Counted from the first letter of the stretch, positions 4,017-31,621 are shown. The stretch: 31,621 nt of DNA from Macrostomum lignano (GCA_002269645.1 NIVC01003901.1:1-31621), one strand, 5' to 3'. The notes: generated by a model from the sequence alone, not told the origin. Program-made: numbers and translations.

Positions 4017-4063
4017 TTAGGTTGGGTTAAAGTTAGGTTTAGGTCAGGTGTGGGTTGAGGGTT
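4017..4063 (+). repeat. Degenerate telomere-like (TTAGGG-related) tract
   Basis: TTAGGTTGGGTTAAAGTTAGGTTTAGGTCAGGTGTGGGTTGAGGGTT, at the position homologous to the 4437 tract in the preceding macro-unit. Confidence 0.6.
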
Positions 4064-4436
4064 ATATTTTATTGGGTTTCAAGGTTAACAGGGGTTTTTT
4101 TAGATTTCAAGGTTTATGGGGGCCATTGCTGACATGTCAAGGCTTACGGGGGGAATAGCTGAGATGTCAAGGCTCATGGGGTATAAATGAGATTTCAAGG
4201 CTAAAGTCAAAAGCTACATGTAGTTTATTGAAAACTTTTTATTACATTATTTGATGCCTCCTCAGGGGAGGGATAGCTGATAAAAAAAGCGTAATGTAAA
4301 AAATAAAATAAGCTTCATGTCGAAGTTAAGAGATTCATTTGGGAATCTCTACGATGTCGAGGCTTGCAGGGAATCGCTATAATGCTGTAGTAGTACTATA
4401 ATGACTCTTAGAGAGAATTACTGAAATGTCAATGCT

Positions 4437-4526
4437 TTAGGGTTAGGTTAGGGTTAGGGCTAGGTTAGGGTTAGGGTTAGGGTTAGGGTTAGGCTAAGGT
4501 TGGGGTTAGGCTAAGGTTAGGGTTAG
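4437..4526 (+). repeat. Interstitial telomere-like repeat (TTAGGG)n
   Basis: Four perfect TTAGGG at 4465-4488, flanked by TTAGG, TTAGGG, CTAGG and CTAAGG variants over ~90 bp. Confidence 0.9.
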
Positions 4527-5479
4527 AAGGTTGACAGATATTTTTAGATTTCCAAGGCTTATTGGGGGCATTGCTGAGATGTCAAGGGTGGAAGTTGATA
4601 TGTTAAAGCTTGTGGGGGAATTACTGACATGTCAAGGCTTAAAAGGTTTGACAGGAGATTTTTTGAGATTTCAAGGATACATGTAGCTTATTAAAAAAAT
4701 GTGTATTGCATTTCTTTGGCTCCCCAACGGGGTGTAGATTGCTAGTAATAAAGCTAAATAATTTTTTGTGTTTTCTCTAAGACAATAGGGACTCCAATGA
4801 GATTTTGAAACTTTCAAATTTATTTCTTTTCAGATATGTATTTGATAGAAGACAATAACAGCATCACAAAATGGCTTCACTTAATAATTTTGGTTGAGTA
4901 ATAAAAGTTATAGCATTTTTTGTCTCAAAAAATTGTTTTTTAGATAGGAAATATATATTATAGGTTGTTGCCATTAGAAGTATGAAAACTAAATTTTTCA
5001 CTTTTTGTTGTCATCTTTTTTGCTATTTAACATACAATGTAGAGTCTAGCATCATTTTAAAGACCAATCAGTTCTACATAGGATTAGCAAATTGTTTTTA
5101 TTCTTTTTAATGTATCTTTTTGGGGATTGCATTTGAATTCTTTTAAAATAAAAAATGCACGTCGAAAAAAGAGCAAATTTCAAATTTCAAATGGCTACTA
5201 TTTAAAATTAATTGCTTTTTCTGAAATCTTTTTATTTGTTTACTCTACAACATATAAAAGTATGTTTTTATACCCTTTTTGCCTATATATTGACAAGGGT
5301 TAAAAAGTTCACCAATTCATGACTTTTTTGCTACTAGAACTTGATAGCATATAATGTTACAAATTACAAAATGTTGATAATTAGCTTTTTATTTGATAGC
5401 ATATCTTAAAGTCGCATATTTTTCAACTTTGAATGATTTTAATTTTAAGACTAATGAATACATATTAAGTTTGGAGTAC

Positions 5480-9160: not shown

Positions 9161-9226
9161 CCTCACTTCGCGGTTTAATTAGTGAGTGGCGACTTCGGCG
9201 CCCAGCCTGCAGGGAACACCCAAGCT

Positions 9227-12200
9227 TAACTACACCAAGCAGTCTCGCGCATGCACAGGCGTTCGAAAATACGCTCACGGCGTGTTATTCTGCTTCCGTG
9301 CACTTGTATTTTGCACGCAGTCAGTTTCTTTAGACAAATAGACACGGTTTAAGCTAGAGGCGCAGTTGCCTTCTAATAACTACACCAAGCAGTCTCGCGC
9401 ATGCACAGGCGTTCGAAAATACGCTCACAGCGTGTTATTCTGCTTCCGTGCACTTGTATTTTGCACGCAGTCAGTTTCTTTCGACAAATAGACACGGTTT
9501 AAGCTAGAGGCGCAGTTGCCTTCTAATAACTACACCAAGCAGTCTCGCGCATGCACAGGCGTTCGAAAATACGCTCACGGCGTGTTATTCTGCTTCCGTG
9601 CACTTGTATTTTGCACGCAGTCAGTTTCTTTAGACAAATAGACACGGTTTAAGCTAGAGGCGCAGTTGCCTTCTAATAACTACACCAAGCAGTCTCGCGC
9701 ATGCACAGGCGTTCGAAAATACGCTCACGGCGTGTTATTCTGCTTCCGTGCACTTGTATTTTGCACGCAGTCAGTTTGTTTAGACAAATAGACACGGTTT
9801 AAGCTAGAGGCGCAGTTGCCTTCTAATAACTACACCAAGCAGTCTCGCGCATGCACAGGCGTTCGAAAATACGCTCACGGCGTGTTATTCTGCTTCCGTG
9901 CACTTGTATTTTGCACGCAGTCAGTTTCTTTAGACAAATAGACACGGTTTAAGCTAGAGGCGCAGTTGCCTTCTAATAACTACACCAAGCAGTCTCGCGC
10001 ATGCACAGGCGTTCGAAAATACGCTCACGGCGTGTTATTCTGCTTCCGTGCACTTGTATTTTGCACGCAGTCAGTTTGTTTAGACAAATAGACACGGTTT
10101 AAGCTAGAGGCGCAGTTGCCTTCTAATAACTACACCAAGCAGTCTCGCGCATGCACAGGCGTTCGAAAATACGCTCACGGCGTGTTATTCTGCTTCCGTG
10201 CACTTGTATTTTGCACGCAGTCAGTTTGTTTAGACAAATAGACACGGTTTAAGCTAGAGGCGCAGTTGCCTTCTAATAACTACACCAAGCAGTCTCGCGC
10301 ATGCACAGGCGTTCGAAAATACGCTCACGGCGTGTTATTCTGCTTCCGTGCACTTGTATTTTGCACGCAGTCAGTTTGTTTAGACAAATAGACACGGTTT
10401 AAGCTAGAGGCGCAGTTGCCTTCTAATAACTACACCAAGCAGTCTCGCGCATGCACAGGCGTTCGAAAATACGCTCACGGCGTGTTATTCTGCTTCCGTG
10501 CACTTGTATTTTGCACGCAGTCAGTTTGTTTAGACAAATAGACACGGTTTAAGCTAGAGGCGCAGTTGCCTTCTAATAACTACACCAAGCAGTCTCGCGC
10601 ATGCACAGGCGTTCGAAAATACGCTCACGGCGTGTTATTCTGCTTCCGTGCACTTGTATTTTGCACGCAGTCAGTTTGTTTAGACAAATAGACACGGTTT
10701 AAGCTAGAGGCGCAGTTGCCTTCTAATAACTACACCAAGCAGTCTCGCGCATGCACAGGCGTTCGAAAATACGCTCACGGCGTGTTATTCTGCTTCCGTG
10801 CACTTGTATTTTGCACGCAGTCAGTTTGTTTAGACAAATAGACACGGTTTAAGCTAGAGGCGCAGTTGCCTTCTAATAACTACACCAAGCAGTCTCGCGC
10901 ATGCACAGGCGTTCGAAAATACGCTCACGGCGTGTTATTCTGCTTCCGTGCACTTGTATTTTGCACGCAGTCAGTTTGTTTAGACAAATAGACACGGTTT
11001 AAGCTAGAGGCGCAGTTGCCTTCTAATAACTACACCAAGCAGTCTCGCGCATGCACAGGCGTTCGAAAATACGCTCACGGCGTGTTATTCTGCTTCCGTG
11101 CACTTGTATTTTGCACGCAGTCAGTTTGTTTAGACAAATAGACACGGTTTAAGCTAGAGGCGCAGTTGCCTTCTAATAACTACACCAAGCAGTCTCGCGC
11201 ATGCACAGGCGTTCGAAAATACGCTCACGGCGTGTTATTCTGCTTCCGTGCACTTGTATTTTGCACGCAGTCAGTTTGTTTAGACAAATAGACACGGTTT
11301 AAGCTAGAGGCGCAGTTGCCTTCTAATAACTACACCAAGCAGTCTCGCGCATGCACAGGCGTTCGAAAATACGCTCACGGCGTGTTATTCTGCTTCCGTG
11401 CACTTGTATTTTGCACGCAGTCAGTTTGTTTAGACAAATAGACACGGTTTAAGCTAGAGGCGCAGTTGCCTTCTAATAACTACACCAAGCAGTCTCGCGC
11501 ATGCACAGGCGTTCGAAAATACGCTCACGGCGTGTTATTCTGCTTCCGTGCACTTGTATTTTGCACGCAGTCAGTTTGTTTAGACAAATAGACACGGTTT
11601 AAGCTAGAGGCGCAGTTGCCTTCTAATAACTACACCAAGCAGTCTCGCGCATGCACAGGCGTTCGAAAATACGCTCACGGCGTGTTATTCTGCTTCCGTG
11701 CACTTGTATTTTGCACGCAGTCAGTTTGTTTAGACAAATAGACACGGTTTAAGCTAGAGGCGCAGTTGCCTTCTAATAACTACACCAAGCAGTCTCGCGC
11801 ATGCACAGGCGTTCGAAAATACGCTCACGGCGTGTTATTCTGCTTCCGTGCACTTGTATTTTGCACGCAGTCAGTTTGTTTAGACAAATAGACACGGTTT
11901 AAGCTAGAGGCGCAGTTGCCTTCTAATAACTACACCAAGCAGTCTCGCGCATGCACAGGCGTTCGAAAATACGCTCACGGCGTGTTATTCTGCTTCCGTG
12001 CACTTGTATTTTGCACGCAGTCAGTTTGTTTAGACAAATAGACACGGTTTAAGCTAGAGGCGCAGTTGCCTTCTAATAACTACACCAAGCAGTCTCGCGC
12101 ATGCACAGGCGTTCGAAAATACGCTCACGGCGTGTTATTCTGCTTCCGTGCACTTGTATTTTGCACGCAGTCAGTTTGTTTAGACAAATAGACACGGTTT

Positions 12201-15200
12201 AAGCTAGAGGCGCAGTTGCCTTCTAATAACTACACCAAGCAGTCTCGCGCATGCACAGGCGTTCGAAAATACGCTCACGGCGTGTTATTCTGCTTCCGTG
12301 CACTTGTATTTTGCACGCAGTCAGTTTGTTTAGACAAATAGACACGGTTTAAGCTAGAGGCGCAGTTGCCTTCTAATAACTACACCAAGCAGTCTCGCGC
12401 ATGCACAGGCGTTCGAAAATACGCTCACGGCGTGTTATTCTGCTTCCGTGCACTTGTATTTTGCACGCAGTCAGTTTGTTTAGACAAATAGACACGGTTT
12501 AAGCTAGAGGCGCAGTTGCCTTCTAATAACTACACCAAGCAGTCTCGCGCATGCACAGGCGTTCGAAAATACGCTCACGGCGTGTTATTCTGCTTCCGTG
12601 CACTTGTATTTTGCACGCAGTCAGTTTGTTTAGACAAATAGACACGGTTTAAGCTAGAGGCGCAGTTGCCTTCTAATAACTACACCAAGCAGTCTCGCGC
12701 ATGCACAGGCGTTCGAAAATACGCTCACGGCGTGTTATTCTGCTTCCGTGCACTTGTATTTTGCACGCAGTCAGTTTGTTTAGACAAATAGACACGGTTT
12801 AAGCTAGAGGCGCAGTTGCCTTCTAATAACTACACCAAGCAGTCTCGCGCATGCACAGGCGTTCGAAAATACGCTCACGGCGTGTTATTCTGCTTCCGTG
12901 CACTTGTATTTTGCACGCAGTCAGTTTGTTTAGACAAATAGACACGGTTTAAGCTAGAGGCGCAGTTGCCTTCTAATAACTACACCAAGCAGTCTCGCGC
13001 ATGCACAGGCGTTCGAAAATACGCTCACGGCGTGTTATTCTGCTTCCGTGCACTTGTATTTTGCACGCAGTCAGTTTGTTTAGACAAATAGACACGGTTT
13101 AAGCTAGAGGCGCAGTTGCCTTCTAATAACTACACCAAGCAGTCTCGCGCATGCACAGGCGTTCGAAAATACGCTCACGGCGTGTTATTCTGCTTCCGTG
13201 CACTTGTATTTTGCACGCAGTCAGTTTGTTTAGACAAATAGACACGGTTTAAGCTAGAGGCGCAGTTGCCTTCTAATAACTACACCAAGCAGTCTCGCGC
13301 ATGCACAGGCGTTCGAAAATACGCTCACGGCGTGTTATTCTGCTTCCGTGCACTTGTATTTTGCACGCAGTCAGTTTGTTTAGACAAATAGACACGGTTT
13401 AAGCTAGAGGCGCAGTTGCCTTCTAATAACTACACCAAGCAGTCTCGCGCATGCACAGGCGTTCGAAAATACGCTCACGGCGTGTTATTCTGCTTCCGTG
13501 CACTTGTATTTTGCACGCAGTCAGTTTGTTTAGACAAATAGACACGGTTTAAGCTAGAGGCGCAGTTGCCTTCTAATAACTACACCAAGCAGTCTCGCGC
13601 ATGCACAGGCGTTCGAAAATACGCTCACGGCGTGTTATTCTGCTTCCGTGCACTTGTATTTTGCACGCAGTCAGTTTGTTTAGACAAATAGACACGGTTT
13701 AAGCTAGAGGCGCAGTTGCCTTCTAATAACTACACCAAGCAGTCTCGCGCATGCACAGGCGTTCGAAAATACGCTCACGGCGTGTTATTCTGCTTCCGTG
13801 CACTTGTATTTTGCACGCAGTCAGTTTGTTTAGACAAATAGACACGGTTTAAGCTAGAGGCGCAGTTGCCTTCTAATAACTACACCAAGCAGTCTCGCGC
13901 ATGCACAGGCGTTCGAAAATACGCTCACGGCGTGTTATTCTGCTTCCGTGCACTTGTATTTTGCACGCAGTCAGTTTGTTTAGACAAATAGACACGGTTT
14001 AAGCTAGAGGCGCAGTTGCCTTCTAATAACTACACCAAGCAGTCTCGCGCATGCACAGGCGTTCGAAAATACGCTCACGGCGTGTTATTCTGCTTCCGTG
14101 CACTTGTATTTTGCACGCAGTCAGTTTGTTTAGACAAATAGACACGGTTTAAGCTAGAGGCGCAGTTGCCTTCTAATAACTACACCAAGCAGTCTCGCGC
14201 ATGCACAGGCGTTCGAAAATACGCTCACGGCGTGTTATTCTGCTTCCGTGCACTTGTATTTTGCACGCAGTCAGTTTGTTTAGACAAATAGACACGGTTT
14301 AAGCTAGAGGCGCAGTTGCCTTCTAATAACTACACCAAGCAGTCTCGCGCATGCACAGGCGTTCGAAAATACGCTCACGGCGTGTTATTCTGCTTCCGTG
14401 CACTTGTATTTTGCACGCAGTCAGTTTGTTTAGACAAATAGACACGGTTTAAGCTAGAGGCGCAGTTGCCTTCTAATAACTACACCAAGCAGTCTCGCGC
14501 ATGCACAGGCGTTCGAAAATACGCTCACGGCGTGTTATTCTGCTTCCGTGCACTTGTATTTTGCACGCAGTCAGTTTGTTTAGACAAATAGACACGGTTT
14601 AAGCTAGAGGCGCAGTTGCCTTCTAATAACTACACCAAGCAGTCTCGCGCATGCACAGGCGTTCGAAAATACGCTCACGGCGTGTTATTCTGCTTCCGTG
14701 CACTTGTATTTTGCACGCAGTCAGTTTGTTTAGACAAATAGACACGGTTTAAGCTAGAGGCGCAGTTGCCTTCTAATAACTACACCAAGCAGTCTCGCGC
14801 ATGCACAGGCGTTCGAAAATACGCTCACGGCGTGTTATTCTGCTTCCGTGCACTTGTATTTTGCACGCAGTCAGTTTGTTTAGACAAATAGACACGGTTT
14901 AAGCTAGAGGCGCAGTTGCCTTCTAATAACTACACCAAGCAGTCTCGCGCATGCACAGGCGTTCGAAAATACGCTCACGGCGTGTTATTCTGCTTCCGTG
15001 CACTTGTATTTTGCACGCAGTCAGTTTGTTTAGACAAATAGACACGGTTTAAGCTAGAGGCGCAGTTGCCTTCTAATAACTACACCAAGCAGTCTCGCGC
15101 ATGCACAGGCGTTCGAAAATACGCTCACGGCGTGTTATTCTGCTTCCGTGCACTTGTATTTTGCACGCAGTCAGTTTGTTTAGACAAATAGACACGGTTT

Positions 15201-18200
15201 AAGCTAGAGGCGCAGTTGCCTTCTAATAACTACACCAAGCAGTCTCGCGCATGCACAGGCGTTCGAAAATACGCTCACGGCGTGTTATTCTGCTTCCGTG
15301 CACTTGTATTTTGCACGCAGTCAGTTTGTTTAGACAAATAGACACGGTTTAAGCTAGAGGCGCAGTTGCCTTCTAATAACTACACCAAGCAGTCTCGCGC
15401 ATGCACAGGCGTTCGAAAATACGCTCACGGCGTGTTATTCTGCTTCCGTGCACTTGTATTTTGCACGCAGTCAGTTTGTTTAGACAAATAGACACGGTTT
15501 AAGCTAGAGGCGCAGTTGCCTTCTAATAACTACACCAAGCAGTCTCGCGCATGCACAGGCGTTCGAAAATACGCTCACGGCGTGTTATTCTGCTTCCGTG
15601 CACTTGTATTTTGCACGCAGTCAGTTTGTTTAGACAAATAGACACGGTTTAAGCTAGAGGCGCAGTTGCCTTCTAATAACTACACCAAGCAGTCTCGCGC
15701 ATGCACAGGCGTTCGAAAATACGCTCACGGCGTGTTATTCTGCTTCCGTGCACTTGTATTTTGCACGCAGTCAGTTTGTTTAGACAAATAGACACGGTTT
15801 AAGCTAGAGGCGCAGTTGCCTTCTAATAACTACACCAAGCAGTCTCGCGCATGCACAGGCGTTCGAAAATACGCTCACGGCGTGTTATTCTGCTTCCGTG
15901 CACTTGTATTTTGCACGCAGTCAGTTTGTTTAGACAAATAGACACGGTTTAAGCTAGAGGCGCAGTTGCCTTCTAATAACTACACCAAGCAGTCTCGCGC
16001 ATGCACAGGCGTTCGAAAATACGCTCACGGCGTGTTATTCTGCTTCCGTGCACTTGTATTTTGCACGCAGTCAGTTTGTTTAGACAAATAGACACGGTTT
16101 AAGCTAGAGGCGCAGTTGCCTTCTAATAACTACACCAAGCAGTCTCGCGCATGCACAGGCGTTCGAAAATACGCTCACGGCGTGTTATTCTGCTTCCGTG
16201 CACTTGTATTTTGCACGCAGTCAGTTTGTTTAGACAAATAGACACGGTTTAAGCTAGAGGCGCAGTTGCCTTCTAATAACTACACCAAGCAGTCTCGCGC
16301 ATGCACAGGCGTTCGAAAATACGCTCACGGCGTGTTATTCTGCTTCCGTGCACTTGTATTTTGCACGCAGTCAGTTTGTTTAGACAAATAGACACGGTTT
16401 AAGCTAGAGGCGCAGTTGCCTTCTAATAACTACACCAAGCAGTCTCGCGCATGCACAGGCGTTCGAAAATACGCTCACGGCGTGTTATTCTGCTTCCGTG
16501 CACTTGTATTTTGCACGCAGTCAGTTTGTTTAGACAAATAGACACGGTTTAAGCTAGAGGCGCAGTTGCCTTCTAATAACTACACCAAGCAGTCTCGCGC
16601 ATGCACAGGCGTTCGAAAATACGCTCACGGCGTGTTATTCTGCTTCCGTGCACTTGTATTTTGCACGCAGTCAGTTTGTTTAGACAAATAGACACGGTTT
16701 AAGCTAGAGGCGCAGTTGCCTTCTAATAACTACACCAAGCAGTCTCGCGCATGCACAGGCGTTCGAAAATACGCTCACGGCGTGTTATTCTGCTTCCGTG
16801 CACTTGTATTTTGCACGCAGTCAGTTTGTTTAGACAAATAGACACGGTTTAAGCTAGAGGCGCAGTTGCCTTCTAATAACTACACCAAGCAGTCTCGCGC
16901 ATGCACAGGCGTTCGAAAATACGCTCACGGCGTGTTATTCTGCTTCCGTGCACTTGTATTTTGCACGCAGTCAGTTTGTTTAGACAAATAGACACGGTTT
17001 AAGCTAGAGGCGCAGTTGCCTTCTAATAACTACACCAAGCAGTCTCGCGCATGCACAGGCGTTCGAAAATACGCTCACGGCGTGTTATTCTGCTTCCGTG
17101 CACTTGTATTTTGCACGCAGTCAGTTTGTTTAGACAAATAGACACGGTTTAAGCTAGAGGCGCAGTTGCCTTCTAATAACTACACCAAGCAGTCTCGCGC
17201 ATGCACAGGCGTTCGAAAATACGCTCACGGCGTGTTATTCTGCTTCCGTGCACTTGTATTTTGCACGCAGTCAGTTTGTTTAGACAAATAGACACGGTTT
17301 AAGCTAGAGGCGCAGTTGCCTTCTAATAACTACACCAAGCAGTCTCGCGCATGCACAGGCGTTCGAAAATACGCTCACGGCGTGTTATTCTGCTTCCGTG
17401 CACTTGTATTTTGCACGCAGTCAGTTTGTTTAGACAAATAGACACGGTTTAAGCTAGAGGCGCAGTTGCCTTCTAATAACTACACCAAGCAGTCTCGCGC
17501 ATGCACAGGCGTTCGAAAATACGCTCACGGCGTGTTATTCTGCTTCCGTGCACTTGTATTTTGCACGCAGTCAGTTTGTTTAGACAAATAGACACGGTTT
17601 AAGCTAGAGGCGCAGTTGCCTTCTAATAACTACACCAAGCAGTCTCGCGCATGCACAGGCGTTCGAAAATACGCTCACGGCGTGTTATTCTGCTTCCGTG
17701 CACTTGTATTTTGCACGCAGTCAGTTTGTTTAGACAAATAGACACGGTTTAAGCTAGAGGCGCAGTTGCCTTCTAATAACTACACCAAGCAGTCTCGCGC
17801 ATGCACAGGCGTTCGAAAATACGCTCACGGCGTGTTATTCTGCTTCCGTGCACTTGTATTTTGCACGCAGTCAGTTTGTTTAGACAAATAGACACGGTTT
17901 AAGCTAGAGGCGCAGTTGCCTTCTAATAACTACACCAAGCAGTCTCGCGCATGCACAGGCGTTCGAAAATACGCTCACGGCGTGTTATTCTGCTTCCGTG
18001 CACTTGTATTTTGCACGCAGTCAGTTTGTTTAGACAAATAGACACGGTTTAAGCTAGAGGCGCAGTTGCCTTCTAATAACTACACCAAGCAGTCTCGCGC
18101 ATGCACAGGCGTTCGAAAATACGCTCACGGCGTGTTATTCTGCTTCCGTGCACTTGTATTTTGCACGCAGTCAGTTTGTTTAGACAAATAGACACGGTTT

Positions 18201-21200
18201 AAGCTAGAGGCGCAGTTGCCTTCTAATAACTACACCAAGCAGTCTCGCGCATGCACAGGCGTTCGAAAATACGCTCACGGCGTGTTATTCTGCTTCCGTG
18301 CACTTGTATTTTGCACGCAGTCAGTTTGTTTAGACAAATAGACACGGTTTAAGCTAGAGGCGCAGTTGCCTTCTAATAACTACACCAAGCAGTCTCGCGC
18401 ATGCACAGGCGTTCGAAAATACGCTCACGGCGTGTTATTCTGCTTCCGTGCACTTGTATTTTGCACGCAGTCAGTTTGTTTAGACAAATAGACACGGTTT
18501 AAGCTAGAGGCGCAGTTGCCTTCTAATAACTACACCAAGCAGTCTCGCGCATGCACAGGCGTTCGAAAATACGCTCACGGCGTGTTATTCTGCTTCCGTG
18601 CACTTGTATTTTGCACGCAGTCAGTTTGTTTAGACAAATAGACACGGTTTAAGCTAGAGGCGCAGTTGCCTTCTAATAACTACACCAAGCAGTCTCGCGC
18701 ATGCACAGGCGTTCGAAAATACGCTCACGGCGTGTTATTCTGCTTCCGTGCACTTGTATTTTGCACGCAGTCAGTTTGTTTAGACAAATAGACACGGTTT
18801 AAGCTAGAGGCGCAGTTGCCTTCTAATAACTACACCAAGCAGTCTCGCGCATGCACAGGCGTTCGAAAATACGCTCACGGCGTGTTATTCTGCTTCCGTG
18901 CACTTGTATTTTGCACGCAGTCAGTTTGTTTAGACAAATAGACACGGTTTAAGCTAGAGGCGCAGTTGCCTTCTAATAACTACACCAAGCAGTCTCGCGC
19001 ATGCACAGGCGTTCGAAAATACGCTCACGGCGTGTTATTCTGCTTCCGTGCACTTGTATTTTGCACGCAGTCAGTTTGTTTAGACAAATAGACACGGTTT
19101 AAGCTAGAGGCGCAGTTGCCTTCTAATAACTACACCAAGCAGTCTCGCGCATGCACAGGCGTTCGAAAATACGCTCACGGCGTGTTATTCTGCTTCCGTG
19201 CACTTGTATTTTGCACGCAGTCAGTTTGTTTAGACAAATAGACACGGTTTAAGCTAGAGGCGCAGTTGCCTTCTAATAACTACACCAAGCAGTCTCGCGC
19301 ATGCACAGGCGTTCGAAAATACGCTCACGGCGTGTTATTCTGCTTCCGTGCACTTGTATTTTGCACGCAGTCAGTTTGTTTAGACAAATAGACACGGTTT
19401 AAGCTAGAGGCGCAGTTGCCTTCTAATAACTACACCAAGCAGTCTCGCGCATGCACAGGCGTTCGAAAATACGCTCACGGCGTGTTATTCTGCTTCCGTG
19501 CACTTGTATTTTGCACGCAGTCAGTTTGTTTAGACAAATAGACACGGTTTAAGCTAGAGGCGCAGTTGCCTTCTAATAACTACACCAAGCAGTCTCGCGC
19601 ATGCACAGGCGTTCGAAAATACGCTCACGGCGTGTTATTCTGCTTCCGTGCACTTGTATTTTGCACGCAGTCAGTTTGTTTAGACAAATAGACACGGTTT
19701 AAGCTAGAGGCGCAGTTGCCTTCTAATAACTACACCAAGCAGTCTCGCGCATGCACAGGCGTTCGAAAATACGCTCACGGCGTGTTATTCTGCTTCCGTG
19801 CACTTGTATTTTGCACGCAGTCAGTTTGTTTAGACAAATAGACACGGTTTAAGCTAGAGGCGCAGTTGCCTTCTAATAACTACACCAAGCAGTCTCGCGC
19901 ATGCACAGGCGTTCGAAAATACGCTCACGGCGTGTTATTCTGCTTCCGTGCACTTGTATTTTGCACGCAGTCAGTTTGTTTAGACAAATAGACACGGTTT
20001 AAGCTAGAGGCGCAGTTGCCTTCTAATAACTACACCAAGCAGTCTCGCGCATGCACAGGCGTTCGAAAATACGCTCACGGCGTGTTATTCTGCTTCCGTG
20101 CACTTGTATTTTGCACGCAGTCAGTTTGTTTAGACAAATAGACACGGTTTAAGCTAGAGGCGCAGTTGCCTTCTAATAACTACACCAAGCAGTCTCGCGC
20201 ATGCACAGGCGTTCGAAAATACGCTCACGGCGTGTTATTCTGCTTCCGTGCACTTGTATTTTGCACGCAGTCAGTTTGTTTAGACAAATAGACACGGTTT
20301 AAGCTAGAGGCGCAGTTGCCTTCTAATAACTACACCAAGCAGTCTCGCGCATGCACAGGCGTTCGAAAATACGCTCACGGCGTGTTATTCTGCTTCCGTG
20401 CACTTGTATTTTGCACGCAGTCAGTTTGTTTAGACAAATAGACACGGTTTAAGCTAGAGGCGCAGTTGCCTTCTAATAACTACACCAAGCAGTCTCGCGC
20501 ATGCACAGGCGTTCGAAAATACGCTCACGGCGTGTTATTCTGCTTCCGTGCACTTGTATTTTGCACGCAGTCAGTTTGTTTAGACAAATAGACACGGTTT
20601 AAGCTAGAGGCGCAGTTGCCTTCTAATAACTACACCAAGCAGTCTCGCGCATGCACAGGCGTTCGAAAATACGCTCACGGCGTGTTATTCTGCTTCCGTG
20701 CACTTGTATTTTGCACGCAGTCAGTTTGTTTAGACAAATAGACACGGTTTAAGCTAGAGGCGCAGTTGCCTTCTAATAACTACACCAAGCAGTCTCGCGC
20801 ATGCACAGGCGTTCGAAAATACGCTCACGGCGTGTTATTCTGCTTCCGTGCACTTGTATTTTGCACGCAGTCAGTTTGTTTAGACAAATAGACACGGTTT
20901 AAGCTAGAGGCGCAGTTGCCTTCTAATAACTACACCAAGCAGTCTCGCGCATGCACAGGCGTTCGAAAATACGCTCACGGCGTGTTATTCTGCTTCCGTG
21001 CACTTGTATTTTGCACGCAGTCAGTTTGTTTAGACAAATAGACACGGTTTAAGCTAGAGGCGCAGTTGCCTTCTAATAACTACACCAAGCAGTCTCGCGC
21101 ATGCACAGGCGTTCGAAAATACGCTCACGGCGTGTTATTCTGCTTCCGTGCACTTGTATTTTGCACGCAGTCAGTTTGTTTAGACAAATAGACACGGTTT

Positions 21201-24200
21201 AAGCTAGAGGCGCAGTTGCCTTCTAATAACTACACCAAGCAGTCTCGCGCATGCACAGGCGTTCGAAAATACGCTCACGGCGTGTTATTCTGCTTCCGTG
21301 CACTTGTATTTTGCACGCAGTCAGTTTGTTTAGACAAATAGACACGGTTTAAGCTAGAGGCGCAGTTGCCTTCTAATAACTACACCAAGCAGTCTCGCGC
21401 ATGCACAGGCGTTCGAAAATACGCTCACGGCGTGTTATTCTGCTTCCGTGCACTTGTATTTTGCACGCAGTCAGTTTGTTTAGACAAATAGACACGGTTT
21501 AAGCTAGAGGCGCAGTTGCCTTCTAATAACTACACCAAGCAGTCTCGCGCATGCACAGGCGTTCGAAAATACGCTCACGGCGTGTTATTCTGCTTCCGTG
21601 CACTTGTATTTTGCACGCAGTCAGTTTGTTTAGACAAATAGACACGGTTTAAGCTAGAGGCGCAGTTGCCTTCTAATAACTACACCAAGCAGTCTCGCGC
21701 ATGCACAGGCGTTCGAAAATACGCTCACGGCGTGTTATTCTGCTTCCGTGCACTTGTATTTTGCACGCAGTCAGTTTGTTTAGACAAATAGACACGGTTT
21801 AAGCTAGAGGCGCAGTTGCCTTCTAATAACTACACCAAGCAGTCTCGCGCATGCACAGGCGTTCGAAAATACGCTCACGGCGTGTTATTCTGCTTCCGTG
21901 CACTTGTATTTTGCACGCAGTCAGTTTGTTTAGACAAATAGACACGGTTTAAGCTAGAGGCGCAGTTGCCTTCTAATAACTACACCAAGCAGTCTCGCGC
22001 ATGCACAGGCGTTCGAAAATACGCTCACGGCGTGTTATTCTGCTTCCGTGCACTTGTATTTTGCACGCAGTCAGTTTGTTTAGACAAATAGACACGGTTT
22101 AAGCTAGAGGCGCAGTTGCCTTCTAATAACTACACCAAGCAGTCTCGCGCATGCACAGGCGTTCGAAAATACGCTCACGGCGTGTTATTCTGCTTCCGTG
22201 CACTTGTATTTTGCACGCAGTCAGTTTGTTTAGACAAATAGACACGGTTTAAGCTAGAGGCGCAGTTGCCTTCTAATAACTACACCAAGCAGTCTCGCGC
22301 ATGCACAGGCGTTCGAAAATACGCTCACGGCGTGTTATTCTGCTTCCGTGCACTTGTATTTTGCACGCAGTCAGTTTGTTTAGACAAATAGACACGGTTT
22401 AAGCTAGAGGCGCAGTTGCCTTCTAATAACTACACCAAGCAGTCTCGCGCATGCACAGGCGTTCGAAAATACGCTCACGGCGTGTTATTCTGCTTCCGTG
22501 CACTTGTATTTTGCACGCAGTCAGTTTGTTTAGACAAATAGACACGGTTTAAGCTAGAGGCGCAGTTGCCTTCTAATAACTACACCAAGCAGTCTCGCGC
22601 ATGCACAGGCGTTCGAAAATACGCTCACGGCGTGTTATTCTGCTTCCGTGCACTTGTATTTTGCACGCAGTCAGTTTGTTTAGACAAATAGACACGGTTT
22701 AAGCTAGAGGCGCAGTTGCCTTCTAATAACTACACCAAGCAGTCTCGCGCATGCACAGGCGTTCGAAAATACGCTCACGGCGTGTTATTCTGCTTCCGTG
22801 CACTTGTATTTTGCACGCAGTCAGTTTGTTTAGACAAATAGACACGGTTTAAGCTAGAGGCGCAGTTGCCTTCTAATAACTACACCAAGCAGTCTCGCGC
22901 ATGCACAGGCGTTCGAAAATACGCTCACGGCGTGTTATTCTGCTTCCGTGCACTTGTATTTTGCACGCAGTCAGTTTGTTTAGACAAATAGACACGGTTT
23001 AAGCTAGAGGCGCAGTTGCCTTCTAATAACTACACCAAGCAGTCTCGCGCATGCACAGGCGTTCGAAAATACGCTCACGGCGTGTTATTCTGCTTCCGTG
23101 CACTTGTATTTTGCACGCAGTCAGTTTGTTTAGACAAATAGACACGGTTTAAGCTAGAGGCGCAGTTGCCTTCTAATAACTACACCAAGCAGTCTCGCGC
23201 ATGCACAGGCGTTCGAAAATACGCTCACGGCGTGTTATTCTGCTTCCGTGCACTTGTATTTTGCACGCAGTCAGTTTGTTTAGACAAATAGACACGGTTT
23301 AAGCTAGAGGCGCAGTTGCCTTCTAATAACTACACCAAGCAGTCTCGCGCATGCACAGGCGTTCGAAAATACGCTCACGGCGTGTTATTCTGCTTCCGTG
23401 CACTTGTATTTTGCACGCAGTCAGTTTGTTTAGACAAATAGACACGGTTTAAGCTAGAGGCGCAGTTGCCTTCTAATAACTACACCAAGCAGTCTCGCGC
23501 ATGCACAGGCGTTCGAAAATACGCTCACGGCGTGTTATTCTGCTTCCGTGCACTTGTATTTTGCACGCAGTCAGTTTGTTTAGACAAATAGACACGGTTT
23601 AAGCTAGAGGCGCAGTTGCCTTCTAATAACTACACCAAGCAGTCTCGCGCATGCACAGGCGTTCGAAAATACGCTCACGGCGTGTTATTCTGCTTCCGTG
23701 CACTTGTATTTTGCACGCAGTCAGTTTGTTTAGACAAATAGACACGGTTTAAGCTAGAGGCGCAGTTGCCTTCTAATAACTACACCAAGCAGTCTCGCGC
23801 ATGCACAGGCGTTCGAAAATACGCTCACGGCGTGTTATTCTGCTTCCGTGCACTTGTATTTTGCACGCAGTCAGTTTGTTTAGACAAATAGACACGGTTT
23901 AAGCTAGAGGCGCAGTTGCCTTCTAATAACTACACCAAGCAGTCTCGCGCATGCACAGGCGTTCGAAAATACGCTCACGGCGTGTTATTCTGCTTCCGTG
24001 CACTTGTATTTTGCACGCAGTCAGTTTGTTTAGACAAATAGACACGGTTTAAGCTAGAGGCGCAGTTGCCTTCTAATAACTACACCAAGCAGTCTCGCGC
24101 ATGCACAGGCGTTCGAAAATACGCTCACGGCGTGTTATTCTGCTTCCGTGCACTTGTATTTTGCACGCAGTCAGTTTGTTTAGACAAATAGACACGGTTT

Positions 24201-27200
24201 AAGCTAGAGGCGCAGTTGCCTTCTAATAACTACACCAAGCAGTCTCGCGCATGCACAGGCGTTCGAAAATACGCTCACGGCGTGTTATTCTGCTTCCGTG
24301 CACTTGTATTTTGCACGCAGTCAGTTTGTTTAGACAAATAGACACGGTTTAAGCTAGAGGCGCAGTTGCCTTCTAATAACTACACCAAGCAGTCTCGCGC
24401 ATGCACAGGCGTTCGAAAATACGCTCACGGCGTGTTATTCTGCTTCCGTGCACTTGTATTTTGCACGCAGTCAGTTTGTTTAGACAAATAGACACGGTTT
24501 AAGCTAGAGGCGCAGTTGCCTTCTAATAACTACACCAAGCAGTCTCGCGCATGCACAGGCGTTCGAAAATACGCTCACGGCGTGTTATTCTGCTTCCGTG
24601 CACTTGTATTTTGCACGCAGTCAGTTTGTTTAGACAAATAGACACGGTTTAAGCTAGAGGCGCAGTTGCCTTCTAATAACTACACCAAGCAGTCTCGCGC
24701 ATGCACAGGCGTTCGAAAATACGCTCACGGCGTGTTATTCTGCTTCCGTGCACTTGTATTTTGCACGCAGTCAGTTTGTTTAGACAAATAGACACGGTTT
24801 AAGCTAGAGGCGCAGTTGCCTTCTAATAACTACACCAAGCAGTCTCGCGCATGCACAGGCGTTCGAAAATACGCTCACGGCGTGTTATTCTGCTTCCGTG
24901 CACTTGTATTTTGCACGCAGTCAGTTTGTTTAGACAAATAGACACGGTTTAAGCTAGAGGCGCAGTTGCCTTCTAATAACTACACCAAGCAGTCTCGCGC
25001 ATGCACAGGCGTTCGAAAATACGCTCACGGCGTGTTATTCTGCTTCCGTGCACTTGTATTTTGCACGCAGTCAGTTTGTTTAGACAAATAGACACGGTTT
25101 AAGCTAGAGGCGCAGTTGCCTTCTAATAACTACACCAAGCAGTCTCGCGCATGCACAGGCGTTCGAAAATACGCTCACGGCGTGTTATTCTGCTTCCGTG
25201 CACTTGTATTTTGCACGCAGTCAGTTTGTTTAGACAAATAGACACGGTTTAAGCTAGAGGCGCAGTTGCCTTCTAATAACTACACCAAGCAGTCTCGCGC
25301 ATGCACAGGCGTTCGAAAATACGCTCACGGCGTGTTATTCTGCTTCCGTGCACTTGTATTTTGCACGCAGTCAGTTTGTTTAGACAAATAGACACGGTTT
25401 AAGCTAGAGGCGCAGTTGCCTTCTAATAACTACACCAAGCAGTCTCGCGCATGCACAGGCGTTCGAAAATACGCTCACGGCGTGTTATTCTGCTTCCGTG
25501 CACTTGTATTTTGCACGCAGTCAGTTTGTTTAGACAAATAGACACGGTTTAAGCTAGAGGCGCAGTTGCCTTCTAATAACTACACCAAGCAGTCTCGCGC
25601 ATGCACAGGCGTTCGAAAATACGCTCACGGCGTGTTATTCTGCTTCCGTGCACTTGTATTTTGCACGCAGTCAGTTTGTTTAGACAAATAGACACGGTTT
25701 AAGCTAGAGGCGCAGTTGCCTTCTAATAACTACACCAAGCAGTCTCGCGCATGCACAGGCGTTCGAAAATACGCTCACGGCGTGTTATTCTGCTTCCGTG
25801 CACTTGTATTTTGCACGCAGTCAGTTTGTTTAGACAAATAGACACGGTTTAAGCTAGAGGCGCAGTTGCCTTCTAATAACTACACCAAGCAGTCTCGCGC
25901 ATGCACAGGCGTTCGAAAATACGCTCACGGCGTGTTATTCTGCTTCCGTGCACTTGTATTTTGCACGCAGTCAGTTTGTTTAGACAAATAGACACGGTTT
26001 AAGCTAGAGGCGCAGTTGCCTTCTAATAACTACACCAAGCAGTCTCGCGCATGCACAGGCGTTCGAAAATACGCTCACGGCGTGTTATTCTGCTTCCGTG
26101 CACTTGTATTTTGCACGCAGTCAGTTTGTTTAGACAAATAGACACGGTTTAAGCTAGAGGCGCAGTTGCCTTCTAATAACTACACCAAGCAGTCTCGCGC
26201 ATGCACAGGCGTTCGAAAATACGCTCACGGCGTGTTATTCTGCTTCCGTGCACTTGTATTTTGCACGCAGTCAGTTTGTTTAGACAAATAGACACGGTTT
26301 AAGCTAGAGGCGCAGTTGCCTTCTAATAACTACACCAAGCAGTCTCGCGCATGCACAGGCGTTCGAAAATACGCTCACGGCGTGTTATTCTGCTTCCGTG
26401 CACTTGTATTTTGCACGCAGTCAGTTTGTTTAGACAAATAGACACGGTTTAAGCTAGAGGCGCAGTTGCCTTCTAATAACTACACCAAGCAGTCTCGCGC
26501 ATGCACAGGCGTTCGAAAATACGCTCACGGCGTGTTATTCTGCTTCCGTGCACTTGTATTTTGCACGCAGTCAGTTTGTTTAGACAAATAGACACGGTTT
26601 AAGCTAGAGGCGCAGTTGCCTTCTAATAACTACACCAAGCAGTCTCGCGCATGCACAGGCGTTCGAAAATACGCTCACGGCGTGTTATTCTGCTTCCGTG
26701 CACTTGTATTTTGCACGCAGTCAGTTTGTTTAGACAAATAGACACGGTTTAAGCTAGAGGCGCAGTTGCCTTCTAATAACTACACCAAGCAGTCTCGCGC
26801 ATGCACAGGCGTTCGAAAATACGCTCACGGCGTGTTATTCTGCTTCCGTGCACTTGTATTTTGCACGCAGTCAGTTTGTTTAGACAAATAGACACGGTTT
26901 AAGCTAGAGGCGCAGTTGCCTTCTAATAACTACACCAAGCAGTCTCGCGCATGCACAGGCGTTCGAAAATACGCTCACGGCGTGTTATTCTGCTTCCGTG
27001 CACTTGTATTTTGCACGCAGTCAGTTTGTTTAGACAAATAGACACGGTTTAAGCTAGAGGCGCAGTTGCCTTCTAATAACTACACCAAGCAGTCTCGCGC
27101 ATGCACAGGCGTTCGAAAATACGCTCACGGCGTGTTATTCTGCTTCCGTGCACTTGTATTTTGCACGCAGTCAGTTTGTTTAGACAAATAGACACGGTTT

Positions 27201-30200
27201 AAGCTAGAGGCGCAGTTGCCTTCTAATAACTACACCAAGCAGTCTCGCGCATGCACAGGCGTTCGAAAATACGCTCACGGCGTGTTATTCTGCTTCCGTG
27301 CACTTGTATTTTGCACGCAGTCAGTTTGTTTAGACAAATAGACACGGTTTAAGCTAGAGGCGCAGTTGCCTTCTAATAACTACACCAAGCAGTCTCGCGC
27401 ATGCACAGGCGTTCGAAAATACGCTCACGGCGTGTTATTCTGCTTCCGTGCACTTGTATTTTGCACGCAGTCAGTTTGTTTAGACAAATAGACACGGTTT
27501 AAGCTAGAGGCGCAGTTGCCTTCTAATAACTACACCAAGCAGTCTCGCGCATGCACAGGCGTTCGAAAATACGCTCACGGCGTGTTATTCTGCTTCCGTG
27601 CACTTGTATTTTGCACGCAGTCAGTTTGTTTAGACAAATAGACACGGTTTAAGCTAGAGGCGCAGTTGCCTTCTAATAACTACACCAAGCAGTCTCGCGC
27701 ATGCACAGGCGTTCGAAAATACGCTCACGGCGTGTTATTCTGCTTCCGTGCACTTGTATTTTGCACGCAGTCAGTTTGTTTAGACAAATAGACACGGTTT
27801 AAGCTAGAGGCGCAGTTGCCTTCTAATAACTACACCAAGCAGTCTCGCGCATGCACAGGCGTTCGAAAATACGCTCACGGCGTGTTATTCTGCTTCCGTG
27901 CACTTGTATTTTGCACGCAGTCAGTTTGTTTAGACAAATAGACACGGTTTAAGCTAGAGGCGCAGTTGCCTTCTAATAACTACACCAAGCAGTCTCGCGC
28001 ATGCACAGGCGTTCGAAAATACGCTCACGGCGTGTTATTCTGCTTCCGTGCACTTGTATTTTGCACGCAGTCAGTTTGTTTAGACAAATAGACACGGTTT
28101 AAGCTAGAGGCGCAGTTGCCTTCTAATAACTACACCAAGCAGTCTCGCGCATGCACAGGCGTTCGAAAATACGCTCACGGCGTGTTATTCTGCTTCCGTG
28201 CACTTGTATTTTGCACGCAGTCAGTTTGTTTAGACAAATAGACACGGTTTAAGCTAGAGGCGCAGTTGCCTTCTAATAACTACACCAAGCAGTCTCGCGC
28301 ATGCACAGGCGTTCGAAAATACGCTCACGGCGTGTTATTCTGCTTCCGTGCACTTGTATTTTGCACGCAGTCAGTTTGTTTAGACAAATAGACACGGTTT
28401 AAGCTAGAGGCGCAGTTGCCTTCTAATAACTACACCAAGCAGTCTCGCGCATGCACAGGCGTTCGAAAATACGCTCACGGCGTGTTATTCTGCTTCCGTG
28501 CACTTGTATTTTGCACGCAGTCAGTTTGTTTAGACAAATAGACACGGTTTAAGCTAGAGGCGCAGTTGCCTTCTAATAACTACACCAAGCAGTCTCGCGC
28601 ATGCACAGGCGTTCGAAAATACGCTCACGGCGTGTTATTCTGCTTCCGTGCACTTGTATTTTGCACGCAGTCAGTTTGTTTAGACAAATAGACACGGTTT
28701 AAGCTAGAGGCGCAGTTGCCTTCTAATAACTACACCAAGCAGTCTCGCGCATGCACAGGCGTTCGAAAATACGCTCACGGCGTGTTATTCTGCTTCCGTG
28801 CACTTGTATTTTGCACGCAGTCAGTTTGTTTAGACAAATAGACACGGTTTAAGCTAGAGGCGCAGTTGCCTTCTAATAACTACACCAAGCAGTCTCGCGC
28901 ATGCACAGGCGTTCGAAAATACGCTCACGGCGTGTTATTCTGCTTCCGTGCACTTGTATTTTGCACGCAGTCAGTTTGTTTAGACAAATAGACACGGTTT
29001 AAGCTAGAGGCGCAGTTGCCTTCTAATAACTACACCAAGCAGTCTCGCGCATGCACAGGCGTTCGAAAATACGCTCACGGCGTGTTATTCTGCTTCCGTG
29101 CACTTGTATTTTGCACGCAGTCAGTTTGTTTAGACAAATAGACACGGTTTAAGCTAGAGGCGCAGTTGCCTTCTAATAACTACACCAAGCAGTCTCGCGC
29201 ATGCACAGGCGTTCGAAAATACGCTCACGGCGTGTTATTCTGCTTCCGTGCACTTGTATTTTGCACGCAGTCAGTTTGTTTAGACAAATAGACACGGTTT
29301 AAGCTAGAGGCGCAGTTGCCTTCTAATAACTACACCAAGCAGTCTCGCGCATGCACAGGCGTTCGAAAATACGCTCACGGCGTGTTATTCTGCTTCCGTG
29401 CACTTGTATTTTGCACGCAGTCAGTTTGTTTAGACAAATAGACACGGTTTAAGCTAGAGGCGCAGTTGCCTTCTAATAACTACACCAAGCAGTCTCGCGC
29501 ATGCACAGGCGTTCGAAAATACGCTCACGGCGTGTTATTCTGCTTCCGTGCACTTGTATTTTGCACGCAGTCAGTTTGTTTAGACAAATAGACACGGTTT
29601 AAGCTAGAGGCGCAGTTGCCTTCTAATAACTACACCAAGCAGTCTCGCGCATGCACAGGCGTTCGAAAATACGCTCACGGCGTGTTATTCTGCTTCCGTG
29701 CACTTGTATTTTGCACGCAGTCAGTTTCTTTAGACAAATAGACACGGTTTAAGCTAGAGGCGCAGTTGCCTTCTAATAACTACACCAAGCAGTCTCGCGC
29801 ATGCACAGGCGTTCGAAAATACGCTCACGGCGTGTTATTCTGCTTCCGTGCACTTGTATTTTGCACGCAGTCAGTTTGTTTAGACAAATAGACACGGTTT
29901 AAGCTAGAGGCGCAGTTGCCTTCTAATAACTACACCAAGCAGTCTCGCGCATGCACAGGCGTTCGAAAATACGCTCACGGCGTGTTATTCTGCTTCCGTG
30001 CACTTGTATTTTGCACGCAGTCAGTTTGTTTAGACAAATAGACACGGTTTAAGCTAGAGGCGCAGTTGCCTTCTAATAACTACACCAAGCAGTCTCGCGC
30101 ATGCACAGGCGTTCGAAAATACGCTCACGGCGTGTTATTCTGCTTCCGTGCACTTGTATTTTGCACGCAGTCAGTTTGTTTAGACAAATAGACACGGTTT

Positions 30201-31621
30201 AAGCTAGAGGCGCAGTTGCCTTCTAATAACTACACCAAGCAGTCTCGCGCATGCACAGGCGTTCGAAAATACGCTCACGGCGTGTTATTCTGCTTCCGTG
30301 CACTTGTATTTTGCACGCAGTCAGTTTGTTTAGACAAATAGACACGGTTTAAGCTAGAGGCGCAGTTGCCTTCTAATAACTACACCAAGCAGTCTCGCGC
30401 ATGCACAGGCGTTCGAAAATACGCTCACGGCGTGTTATTCTGCTTCCGTGCACTTGTATTTTGCACGCAGTCAGTTTGTTTAGACAAATAGACACGGTTT
30501 AAGCTAGAGGCGCAGTTGCCTTCTAATAACTACACCAAGCAGTCTCGCGCATGCACAGGCGTTCGAAAATACGCTCACGGCGTGTTATTCTGCTTCCGTG
30601 CACTTGTATTTTGCACGCAGTCAGTTTGTTTAGACAAATAGACACGGTTTAAGCTAGAGGCGCAGTTGCCTTCTAATAACTACACCAAGCAGTCTCGCGC
30701 ATGCACAGGCGTTCGAAAATACGCTCACGGCGTGTTATTCTGCTTCCGTGCACTTGTATTTTGCACGCAGTCAGTTTGTTTAGACAAATAGACACGGTTT
30801 AAGCTAGAGGCGCAGTTGCCTTCTAATAACTACACCAAGCAGTCTCGCGCATGCACAGGCGTTCGAAAATACGCTCACGGCGTGTTATTCTGCTTCCGTG
30901 CACTTGTATTTTGCACGCAGTCAGTTTGTTTAGACAAATAGACACGGTTTAAGCTAGAGGCGCAGTTGCCTTCTAATAACTACACCAAGCAGTCTCGCGC
31001 ATGCACAGGCGTTCGAAAATACGCTCACGGCGTGTTATTCTGCTTCCGTGCACTTGTATTTTGCACGCAGTCAGTTTCTTTAGACAAATAGACACGGTTT
31101 AAGCTAGAGGCGCAGTTGCCTTCTAATAACTACACCAAGCAGTCTCGCGCATGCACAGGCGTTCGAAAATACGCTCACGGCGTGTTATTCTGCTTCCGTG
31201 CACTTGTATTTTGCACGCAGTCAGTTTCTTTAGACAAATAGACACGGTTTAAGCTAGAGGCGCAGTTGCCTTCTAATAACTACACCAAGCAGTCTCGCGC
31301 ATGCACAGGCGTTCGAAAATACGCTCACGGCGTGTTATTCTGCTTCCGTGCACTTGTATTTTGCACGCAGTCAGTTTGTTTAGACAAATAGACACGGTTT
31401 AAGCTAGAGGCGCAGTTGCCTTCTAATAACTACACCAAGCAGTCTCGCGCATGCACAGGCGTTCGAAAATACGCTCACGGCGTGTTATTCTGCTTCCGTG
31501 CACTTGTATTTTGCACGCAGTCAGTTTGTTTAGACAAATAGACACGGTTTAAGCTAGAGGCGCAGTTGCCTTCTAATAACTACACCAAGCAGTCTCGCGC
31601 ATGCACAGGCGTTTCGAAAAT
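9227..31621. repeat. 150-bp tandem satellite DNA array, ~149.3 copies, runs off the window end (candidate centromeric/pericentromeric satellite)
   Basis: Exact 150-bp period. Consensus: TAACTACACCAAGCAGTCTCGCGCATGCACAGGCGTTCGAAAATACGCTCACGGCGTGTTATTCTGCTTCCGTGCACTTGTATTTTGCACGCAGTCAGTTTGTTTAGACAAATAGACACGGTTTAAGCTAGAGGCGCAGTTGCCTTCTAA (71/150 GC, 11 CpG by hand count). The confidence refers to the satellite call; centromeric function is not shown by the sequence. Confidence 0.99.

What the first reader, a model, noticed from the sequence alone, without database searches (positions are those of the whole stretch)
9227..31621. Nucleosome-sized, near-invariant 150-bp satellite: candidate centromere-type array edge
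Seen: over 22 kb of head-to-tail 150-bp monomers with no indel except one at the window end, at 47% GC against a very AT-rich flank. Established: centromeric satellites in many animals and plants have monomers of about one nucleosome, and active arrays tend to be the most homogenised. Inference: this may be the centromeric or major heterochromatic satellite of this genome. I do not recognise the monomer, so it may be an undescribed family, but that needs a database search.
Basis: partly seen in the sequence, partly recalled or inferred. Interest (0 to 1): 0.7.

Follow-up and report, generated by a model that had tools for sequence, protein, structure and literature searches.

The report
Very uniform 150-bp satellite DNA array
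The window ends in a real stretch of at least 22 kb of non-coding satellite DNA made of almost identical 150-base units, an ordinary kind of eukaryotic repeat, and nothing in the window shows whether it marks a centromere.

Summary
From 9227 to the window end there are 149 head-to-tail 150-bp monomers plus a 45-base partial one. Monomers 6-136 are 131 identical copies. Only three sites vary, and the single indel is one extra T, 8 bases from the end.

The monomer is 47% GC with CpG observed/expected 1.31. The gene-free, repeat-rich eukaryotic flank is 31.5% GC with CpG o/e 0.45. The 630 bp touching the array are 51% GC, so the AT-rich DNA does not abut it.

The monomer has stop codons in all six frames, no Rfam match, no structured-RNA signal, no CENP-B box, no excess dyad symmetry, no significant 10-bp periodicity and no similarity to the flank.

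It is best read as a very young or very actively homogenised heterochromatic satellite.

The centromere idea cannot be tested: the source organism is unknown and no collection I could search holds this sequence. The nearby telomere-like tract is part of a repeated unit of about 480 bp and does not settle the location.

The uniformity may be partly a polishing artefact.

Novelty is unresolved because nt, WGS, Dfam and Repbase were not available. Interest is low to moderate.

The parts
9227..31621 (.). 150-bp satellite array: 149 full monomers plus a 45-base partial one. It runs off the right end of the window, so its true length is at least 22.4 kb.
   Evidence: TRF: period 150, 149.3 copies, 99% matches, score 44718. 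All monomers stay in register.
9227..9976 (.). Left-edge monomers 1-5. Monomers 1, 2, 3 and 5 carry C at position 102. Monomer 2 also has G53A (a CpG-to-CpA change) and A106C.
   Evidence: Per-monomer differences from the consensus. By inference, the edge keeps the minority, probably older, variant.
9977..29626 (.). Core block of 131 consecutive identical monomers (19,650 bp), all with G at position 102.
   Evidence: Zero differences from the consensus in monomers 6-136.
29627..31576 (.). Monomers 137-149. The 102C variant reappears in monomers 137, 146 and 147.
31577..31621 (.). Partial last monomer with one extra T in the run at 31612-31614. This is the only indel in the array. By inference it is probably an unpolished contig end.
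8600..9226 (.). Non-repetitive junction segment, GC 51%, CpG o/e 0.69. It lies between the AT-rich flank and the array and contains a G-quadruplex motif, GGGTGGGCGGGTGGGCGGGG, at 9138-9157. It shows no similarity to the monomer.
   Evidence: Composition, G4 regular expression, blastn of a monomer dimer against the flank, no Rfam match.
3640..4760 (+). Context only: a unit of about 480 bp in 2.3 tandem copies. Each full copy holds a telomere-like tract (degenerate at 4016-4070; TTAGGG-rich at 4437-4526, G-strand on +).
   Evidence: TRF, repeat families D4, D5, D7, D8, D12, alignment A1, unit counts.

Best explanation
This is a genuine, non-coding satellite DNA array in a eukaryotic genome. By inference, it makes no product and acts at most at the chromatin level, with about one nucleosome per 150-bp unit in constitutive heterochromatin.

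Its near-perfect uniformity means one variant monomer (G at position 102) was amplified or swept through the array very recently. The usual routes are unequal sister-chromatid exchange, gene conversion, or replication slippage or rolling-circle re-insertion. The minority 102C variant survives at the left edge and in a few units near the right end.

Assuming 1e-9 to 1e-8 substitutions per base per generation, 19,650 identical bases imply homogenisation within roughly the last 10^4-10^5 generations, and sooner if its 11 CpGs per unit are methylated.

The chromosomal role is not shown. I rank a non-centromeric heterochromatic block (subtelomeric or interstitial) above the functional centromere. 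That ranking rests mainly on base rates and on the lack of any layered, diverged edge.

Shown: the array's anatomy, the absence of coding or known-RNA signals, and the CpG contrast with the flank. Inferred: the mechanism, the age and the chromatin role.
For: - Array anatomy and identity.
- Stop codons in all six frames.
- No Rfam match, even at E<=10 on three monomers alone.
- No tRNA gene in positions 1-10000, which include the first five monomers.
- No structured-RNA signal (best z = -2.6 among 150 windows).
- The flank looks eukaryotic and gene-free: stop density near the random expectation, microsatellites, minisatellites, MITE-like inverted repeats and a telomere-like tract.
- CpG o/e is 1.31 in the monomer against 0.45 in the flank, so the repeat has not undergone the CpG decay seen next to it.
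- The shared 102C variant at the left edge and in three units near the right end fits real descent better than random error.
- The boundary is sharp, with no relic monomers.
Against: - A polisher that maps reads ambiguously can erase real variation, so the 131 identical copies may overstate uniformity. The window probably ends at a contig break inside the array (terminal homopolymer indel).
- Nothing here measures chromatin state, copy number in the genome or chromosomal position.
- A high CpG content could instead reflect function or lack of methylation rather than youth.
- No second copy of the repeat was found anywhere, so I cannot show it is a genome-wide family at all.
Confidence: 0.6

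Rival explanations
1. Centromeric satellite: the array is the edge of a functional centromere, whose units each wrap a CENP-A nucleosome. Its uniformity would reflect the rapid homogenisation typical of active centromere cores.
For: The monomer length is in the class of many centromeric repeats, the array is long and extremely homogeneous, and it runs off the window, so it may be far larger. Telomere-like tracts also occur in pericentromeres (PMC9498494), so the nearby tract does not argue against this.
Against: No CENP-B box, no excess dyad symmetry and no significant 10-bp WW periodicity. The unit is GC- and CpG-rich. There is no higher-order repeat and no graded, diverged monomers or layered pericentromeric repeats at the edge. 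Most satellite arrays in a genome are not the centromeric one (own knowledge). None of these points is decisive.
Confidence: 0.2
2. Subtelomeric (telomere-associated) satellite: the array lies between repeat-rich subterminal DNA and the terminal telomere, which would be to the right of the window.
For: A TTAGGG-rich tract at 4437-4526 has its G-strand on +, so it points towards the array. The flank is rich in minisatellites and free of genes. GC- and CpG-richness fits recombination-prone chromosome ends (own knowledge).
Against: The telomere-like tract sits at the same place in two tandem copies of a unit of about 480 bp. It is therefore part of a repeated element rather than a healed end. Such tracts also occur near centromeres. 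No terminal telomere is seen, because the array runs off the window.
Confidence: 0.25
3. Assembly or polishing artefact in degree: a repeat is really there, but its length and its perfect identity come from consensus polishing with ambiguously placed reads, and the contig simply stops where the assembler gave up.
For: The 131 identical copies span about one long-read length. The only indel is a homopolymer error 8 bases from the end, as at an unpolished contig end.
Against: The same 102C variant is retained at specific units deep in the array (137, 146, 147) as well as at the left edge. Wholesale consensus collapse would tend to erase it.
Confidence: 0.25
4. Tandem array of small-RNA genes (for example a lineage-specific spliced-leader or pol III RNA), kept GC- and CpG-rich by selection and uniform by concerted evolution.
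For: The GC and CpG content stand out against a CpG-depleted flank. The unit holds a partial B-box-like GTTCGAA and a TTTT run (read directly from the sequence).
Against: No Rfam family matches, even at E<=10. No tRNA gene was found in positions 1-10000, which include the first five monomers. Folding energy is not unusual on either strand in any phase. No A-box was recognisable by eye in the sequence (not scanned).
Confidence: 0.05
5. Transposon-seeded repeat: the unit began as the internal tandem repeat of a mobile element (Helitron- or MITE-borne, as in bivalves) and then expanded locally. The 630-bp GC-rich segment would be an arm of that element.
For: The flank is full of elements that carry internal tandem repeats (2836-3608, 3640-4760) and MITE-like inverted repeats. 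A compositionally distinct 630-bp segment directly abuts the array.
Against: Neither the monomer nor the 630-bp segment resembles anything else in the window. No terminal inverted repeat or Helitron-type end was recognised at the junction.
Confidence: 0.15

Closest known systems
Centromeric satellites (human alpha satellite 171 bp, Arabidopsis CEN178/180, rice CentO 155 bp, maize CentC 156 bp; from own knowledge)
   Same: Head-to-tail array, monomer close to one nucleosome length, strong local homogenisation, non-coding.
   Different: No CENP-B box, no higher-order repeat, GC- and CpG-rich, and a sharp undiverged edge. CENP-A binding and chromosomal position are unknown. Sequence similarity to these families could not be tested against a repeat database.
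Subtelomeric, telomere-associated satellites (tomato TGR1 162 bp, tobacco HRS60 about 180 bp, rye pSc200; from own knowledge; general review PMC9498494)
   Same: A long homogeneous array next to repeat-rich, gene-poor DNA that contains a telomere-like tract oriented towards the array.
   Different: No terminal telomere is seen, and the telomere-like tract belongs to a repeated unit of about 480 bp.
Transposon-associated satellites of bivalves (Cg170/BIV160-type repeats in Helitron or pearl-like elements; from own knowledge)
   Same: Monomer of 150-170 bp and a flank rich in MITE-like elements and internal tandem repeats.
   Different: No similarity between the monomer and any flank element. 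The bivalve arrays are mostly short and scattered, whereas this one is at least 149 units. The organism is unknown.
Tandem small-RNA gene arrays (5S rDNA, spliced-leader RNA repeats)
   Same: GC- and CpG-rich units kept uniform by concerted evolution in an AT-rich genome.
   Different: No Rfam match, no unusual folding energy and no recognisable promoter set.

Membership tests
Satellite DNA (generic tandem repeat of more than 100 bp in long arrays) | Head-to-tail monomers of constant length in an array of many kilobases | tested here: met
   Period 150, 149.3 copies, 22.4 kb, all in register.
Satellite DNA (generic) | Non-coding: no protein or known RNA product | tested here: met
   Stop codons in all six frames. 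No Rfam match. No structured-RNA signal. No protein shares words with the longest open frame.
Centromeric satellite | Occupied by CENP-A/CENH3 nucleosomes | not testable with these tools
   Needs ChIP or CUT&Tag in the source organism, which is unknown.
Centromeric satellite | One major array per chromosome at the primary constriction | not testable with these tools
   No assembly of the source genome is available. No other copy was found in any searchable collection.
Centromeric satellite | CENP-B box (TTCGNNNNANNCGGG); found in some lineages only, so not strictly defining | tested here: not met
   Zero matches with up to 1 mismatch in the whole window.
Centromeric satellite | Excess dyad symmetry or non-B DNA potential (proposed for satellites that lack CENP-B boxes) | tested here: not met
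   DNA folding of the monomer gives z = -1.59; 13 of 200 shuffles fold as well.
Centromeric satellite | Monomer length near one nucleosome (common, not defining) | tested here: met
   150 bp. However, 10-bp WW periodicity is not significant, p about 0.10.
Subtelomeric satellite | Array directly adjoins the terminal telomere repeat | not testable with these tools
   The array runs off the window end.
Subtelomeric satellite | Telomere-like tracts in the proximal flank, oriented towards the chromosome end | tested here: inconclusive
   A TTAGGG-rich tract at 4437-4526 on + points towards the array. It is part of a repeated unit of about 480 bp, and such tracts also occur near centromeres.
Transposon-derived tandem repeat | Monomer is homologous to the interior of a dispersed mobile element | tested here: inconclusive
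   No similarity to anything in the 9.2-kb flank. The genome-wide test is not possible.
Any described satellite family | Sequence similarity to a published or database consensus | tested here: inconclusive
   No match in the full text of 8.3 million papers using 20-mers and 12-mers of both strands, in Rfam, in phages or plasmids, or in the metagenome, prokaryote-genome and viral collections. Dfam, Repbase, nt and WGS were not available.

The most novel reading that the evidence does not exclude
A newly born satellite as CpG-dense as a CpG island has very recently taken over, or is taking over, centromere function in an AT-rich, CpG-depleted genome. On this reading the window shows its undiverged edge. 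That would make the locus a rare snapshot of centromere-repeat turnover at its earliest stage, with almost no mutations yet accumulated.
Probability: 0.08. Interest if true: 0.55.

Novelty: new member of a known kind. Interest (0 to 1): 0.25.

Why it matters
If the assembly is right, 131 identical units with undecayed CpGs beside a CpG-depleted flank mark one of the youngest or most actively homogenised satellite arrays one can expect to see. Such an array would be a useful case for measuring rates of repeat turnover. It could also help find the centromeres or chromosome ends of the source species. Without the organism, the rest of the genome and chromatin data, it remains an ordinary satellite at a contig end.

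Tried and rejected
**Finding the organism or another copy. All attempts were empty.**
- Exact 30-mers of the monomer in the metagenome, prokaryote-genome and viral collections.
- A MITE terminal-repeat pattern from the flank in the metagenome and genome collections.
- Exact look-up of window ORFs in the gene-position index.
- Protein searches with the longest open monomer frame and with a MITE-borne ORF.
- blastn against plasmids and phages.
- Full-text paper searches: monomer 20-mers, 12-mers of both strands, flank-repeat words, '150-bp satellite' phrases and satellitome-style names. The sequence-word searches found nothing. The phrase and name searches returned only unrelated plants, beetles, frogs, ticks and a snake.
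I did not push it further, because stop density is at the random expectation.

**Readings rejected.**
- Protein-coding repeat: stop codons in all frames.
- tRNA, 5S, snRNA, spliced-leader or hammerhead origin: no hits.
- Structured RNA: no signal.
- In-vitro rolling-circle concatemer or synthetic array: the array is joined to natural-looking flank and carries a shared variant at specific units.
- Monomer derived from the adjacent flank: no similarity.
- A 10-base match of flank 9172-9181 to the start of nematode SL1 (recalled from memory): judged coincidence, because there is no Rfam SL1 hit and the telomere-like repeat is TTAGGG.

Full report
**Observation**

Tandem Repeats Finder finds a single array from 9227 to the last base of the window: period 150, 149.3 copies, 99% matches, no indels, score 44718. 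Cutting it into 150-base pieces shows 149 full monomers in perfect register and a 45-base partial one.

- Monomers 6-136 (9977-29626) are 131 identical copies.
- Only three sites vary. Position 102 is C instead of G in monomers 1, 2, 3, 5, 137, 146 and 147. Monomer 2 also carries G53A (a CpG-to-CpA change) and A106C.
- The one indel is an extra T in the run at 31612-31614, 8 bases from the window end.
- Mean pairwise difference is 0.00078 per site.
- The monomer is 47.3% GC. The flank 1-8600 is 31.5% GC.

A non-repetitive segment at 8600-9226, with 51% GC, lies between the AT-rich DNA and the array. The left boundary at 9227 is abrupt. A sensitive blastn of a monomer dimer against 1-9226 gives only chance words of 8-11 bases, and the monomer has no internal sub-repeat.

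**What the unit is not**

- All six frames have stop codons; the most open frame has one per unit.
- The 49-residue open stretch shares no words with any of 5.8 billion proteins.
- Rfam gives nothing for the array edge at E<=1, for three monomers alone at E<=10, or for the junction beyond a chance miRNA-like hairpin.
- ARAGORN finds no tRNA gene in 1-10000, which includes the first five monomers.
- RNA folding of 150 windows covering both strands and all phases gives a best z of -2.6 and a median of -0.7.
- DNA folding of the monomer gives z = -1.59.
- There is no CENP-B box with up to one mismatch anywhere in the window.
- The 10-bp WW periodicity expected of a strong nucleosome-positioning sequence is not significant, p about 0.10.

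**Surroundings**

The 9.2-kb flank has no ORF above 95 codons, and its stop density is close to the random expectation. It is a patchwork of repeats:

- (TA)n at 1320-1446.
- A 22/23-bp minisatellite at 2836-3608.
- A unit of about 480 bp in 2.3 tandem copies at 3640-4760.
- Palindromic repeats at 5478-6300.
- A MITE-like element with 19-base terminal inverted repeats at 7068-7740.
- Pieces with tRNA-like A and B boxes.

This is eukaryotic, gene-poor DNA.

The tract at 4437-4526 holds 8 TTAGGG and 3 TTAGG units with the G-strand on +, so it points towards the array. However, it sits at the same place in both full copies of the 480-bp unit, and the other copy is degenerate at 4016-4070. It therefore belongs to a repeated element and is not a healed chromosome end. 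Telomere-like tracts are also known from pericentromeres (PMC9498494). The tract does not tell subtelomere from pericentromere.

**The most informative contrast: CpG**

The monomer has 11 CpGs (observed/expected 1.31). The flank has 0.45 and the junction segment 0.69. The flank has evidently lost CpGs over time, as methylated DNA does. The repeat has not.

Taken with the 19,650 identical bases, this points to very recent amplification or sweeping homogenisation. At an assumed 1e-9 to 1e-8 substitutions per base per generation, that is within the last 10^4-10^5 generations, and sooner if the CpGs are methylated (inference). The alternatives are an unmethylated state or selection on the sequence.

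The minority 102C variant sits at the left edge and in three units near the right end. That pattern is expected if a G102 unit swept the interior by unequal exchange or conversion while the edge units were left behind (inference).

**Caveat on the assembly**

Several features fit a contig that stops where the assembler could no longer place reads. The window ends inside a unit. The only indel is a homopolymer error next to that end. The identical block is about one long-read length. Polishing with ambiguously placed reads can erase real variants. The retention of the same variant at specific deep units (137, 146, 147) argues that reads were placed accurately, but only the raw reads can settle this.

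**Search for relatives and for the organism**

Every route open to me was empty.

- Exact 30-mers of the monomer in the metagenome, prokaryote-genome and viral collections.
- A flank MITE pattern in the metagenome and genome collections.
- Exact gene look-ups.
- A second protein search.
- Plasmids and phages.
- Full-text searches of about 8.3 million papers with 20-mers and 12-mers of both strands, flank words, size phrases and satellitome-style names.

None of these collections is a eukaryotic nucleotide or repeat database. 'No match' therefore means little for novelty.

**Interpretation**

The best-supported reading is an ordinary kind of object in an unusually pristine state. It is a non-coding heterochromatic satellite that was amplified or homogenised very recently, presumably packaged at about one nucleosome per unit.

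The centromere reading cannot be tested here. The testable sequence hints are neutral to mildly negative:

- no CENP-B box;
- no dyad excess;
- no higher-order repeat;
- no graded edge;
- GC- and CpG-rich.

None of them is decisive. I give it about 0.2, and about 0.25 to a subtelomeric satellite. An interstitial block, possibly seeded by a transposon, takes much of the rest. A small-RNA gene array gets about 0.05. A polishing artefact affecting the degree of uniformity is a separate, non-exclusive risk of about 0.25.

**Verdict**

The interpretation cannot be decided from this window. It is filed as a new member of a known kind, provisionally, pending a search of nt and Dfam. Interest is 0.25.

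Noticed in passing
window 9227-31621 versus 1-8600: CpG observed/expected is 1.31 in the satellite unit (11 CpGs per 150 bp, as dense as a CpG island) against 0.45 in the flank. The repeat has escaped the CpG decay seen next to it.
   Followed up: partly
window 3640-4760: A unit of about 480 bp in 2.3 tandem copies. Each full copy holds 30-bp sub-repeats (CTGAGATGTCAAGGCT...GGGGG) and a telomere-like tract (4016-4070 degenerate; 4437-4526 with 8 TTAGGG and 3 TTAGG units).
   Followed up: partly
window 2836-3608: A 22/23-bp minisatellite (GTCATGTAAAAAATCATAGAAGC, about 34 copies) with a 202-bp higher-order period. Its unit resembles a motif inside the neighbouring 480-bp unit. It is preceded at about 2755-2775 by a tRNA B-box-like GGGTTCGAATC.
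   Followed up: no
window 7068-7740: A MITE-like element of about 670 bp with 19-base terminal inverted repeats (CCATACTCAGGAAGGTGGC / GCCACCTTCCTGACTATGG, 95% complementary). The pattern is absent from the metagenome and prokaryote-genome collections.
   Followed up: partly
window 5478-6300: A cluster of nested inverted repeats and 49-bp tandem repeats built on TAGAGACACGGC/GCCGTGTCTCTA. It gives weak chance miRNA-like Rfam hits (mir-994, E about 0.03-0.04, far below the gathering score).
   Followed up: no
window 1463-2282: A pair of 29-base inverted repeats, 93% complementary, 762 bp apart (AAAATGGCTTAAGGCTCATTCCATATAAG). This is probably another non-autonomous DNA transposon.
   Followed up: no
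window 5578-5640: A tRNA-like stretch with A-box (TGGCTCAGTGG) and B-box-like (GGTTTGAATCC) motifs. ARAGORN does not call it a tRNA. It is probably a SINE head.
   Followed up: no
window 9138-9157: A G-quadruplex motif, GGGTGGGCGGGTGGGCGGGG, 70 bases left of the first monomer, inside the GC-rich junction segment.
   Followed up: no
window 9213-9240: The last bases of the flank (GGAACACCCAAGCT) resemble the first bases of the monomer (TAACTACACCAAGC). This could be microhomology linked to the origin of the first duplication, or it could be chance.
   Followed up: no
window 9172-9181 and 9218-9224: GGTTTAATTA and ACCCAAG match the two halves of the nematode SL1 leader as I recall it. There is no Rfam SL1 hit and the telomere-like repeat is TTAGGG, so I treat this as coincidence.
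   Followed up: partly
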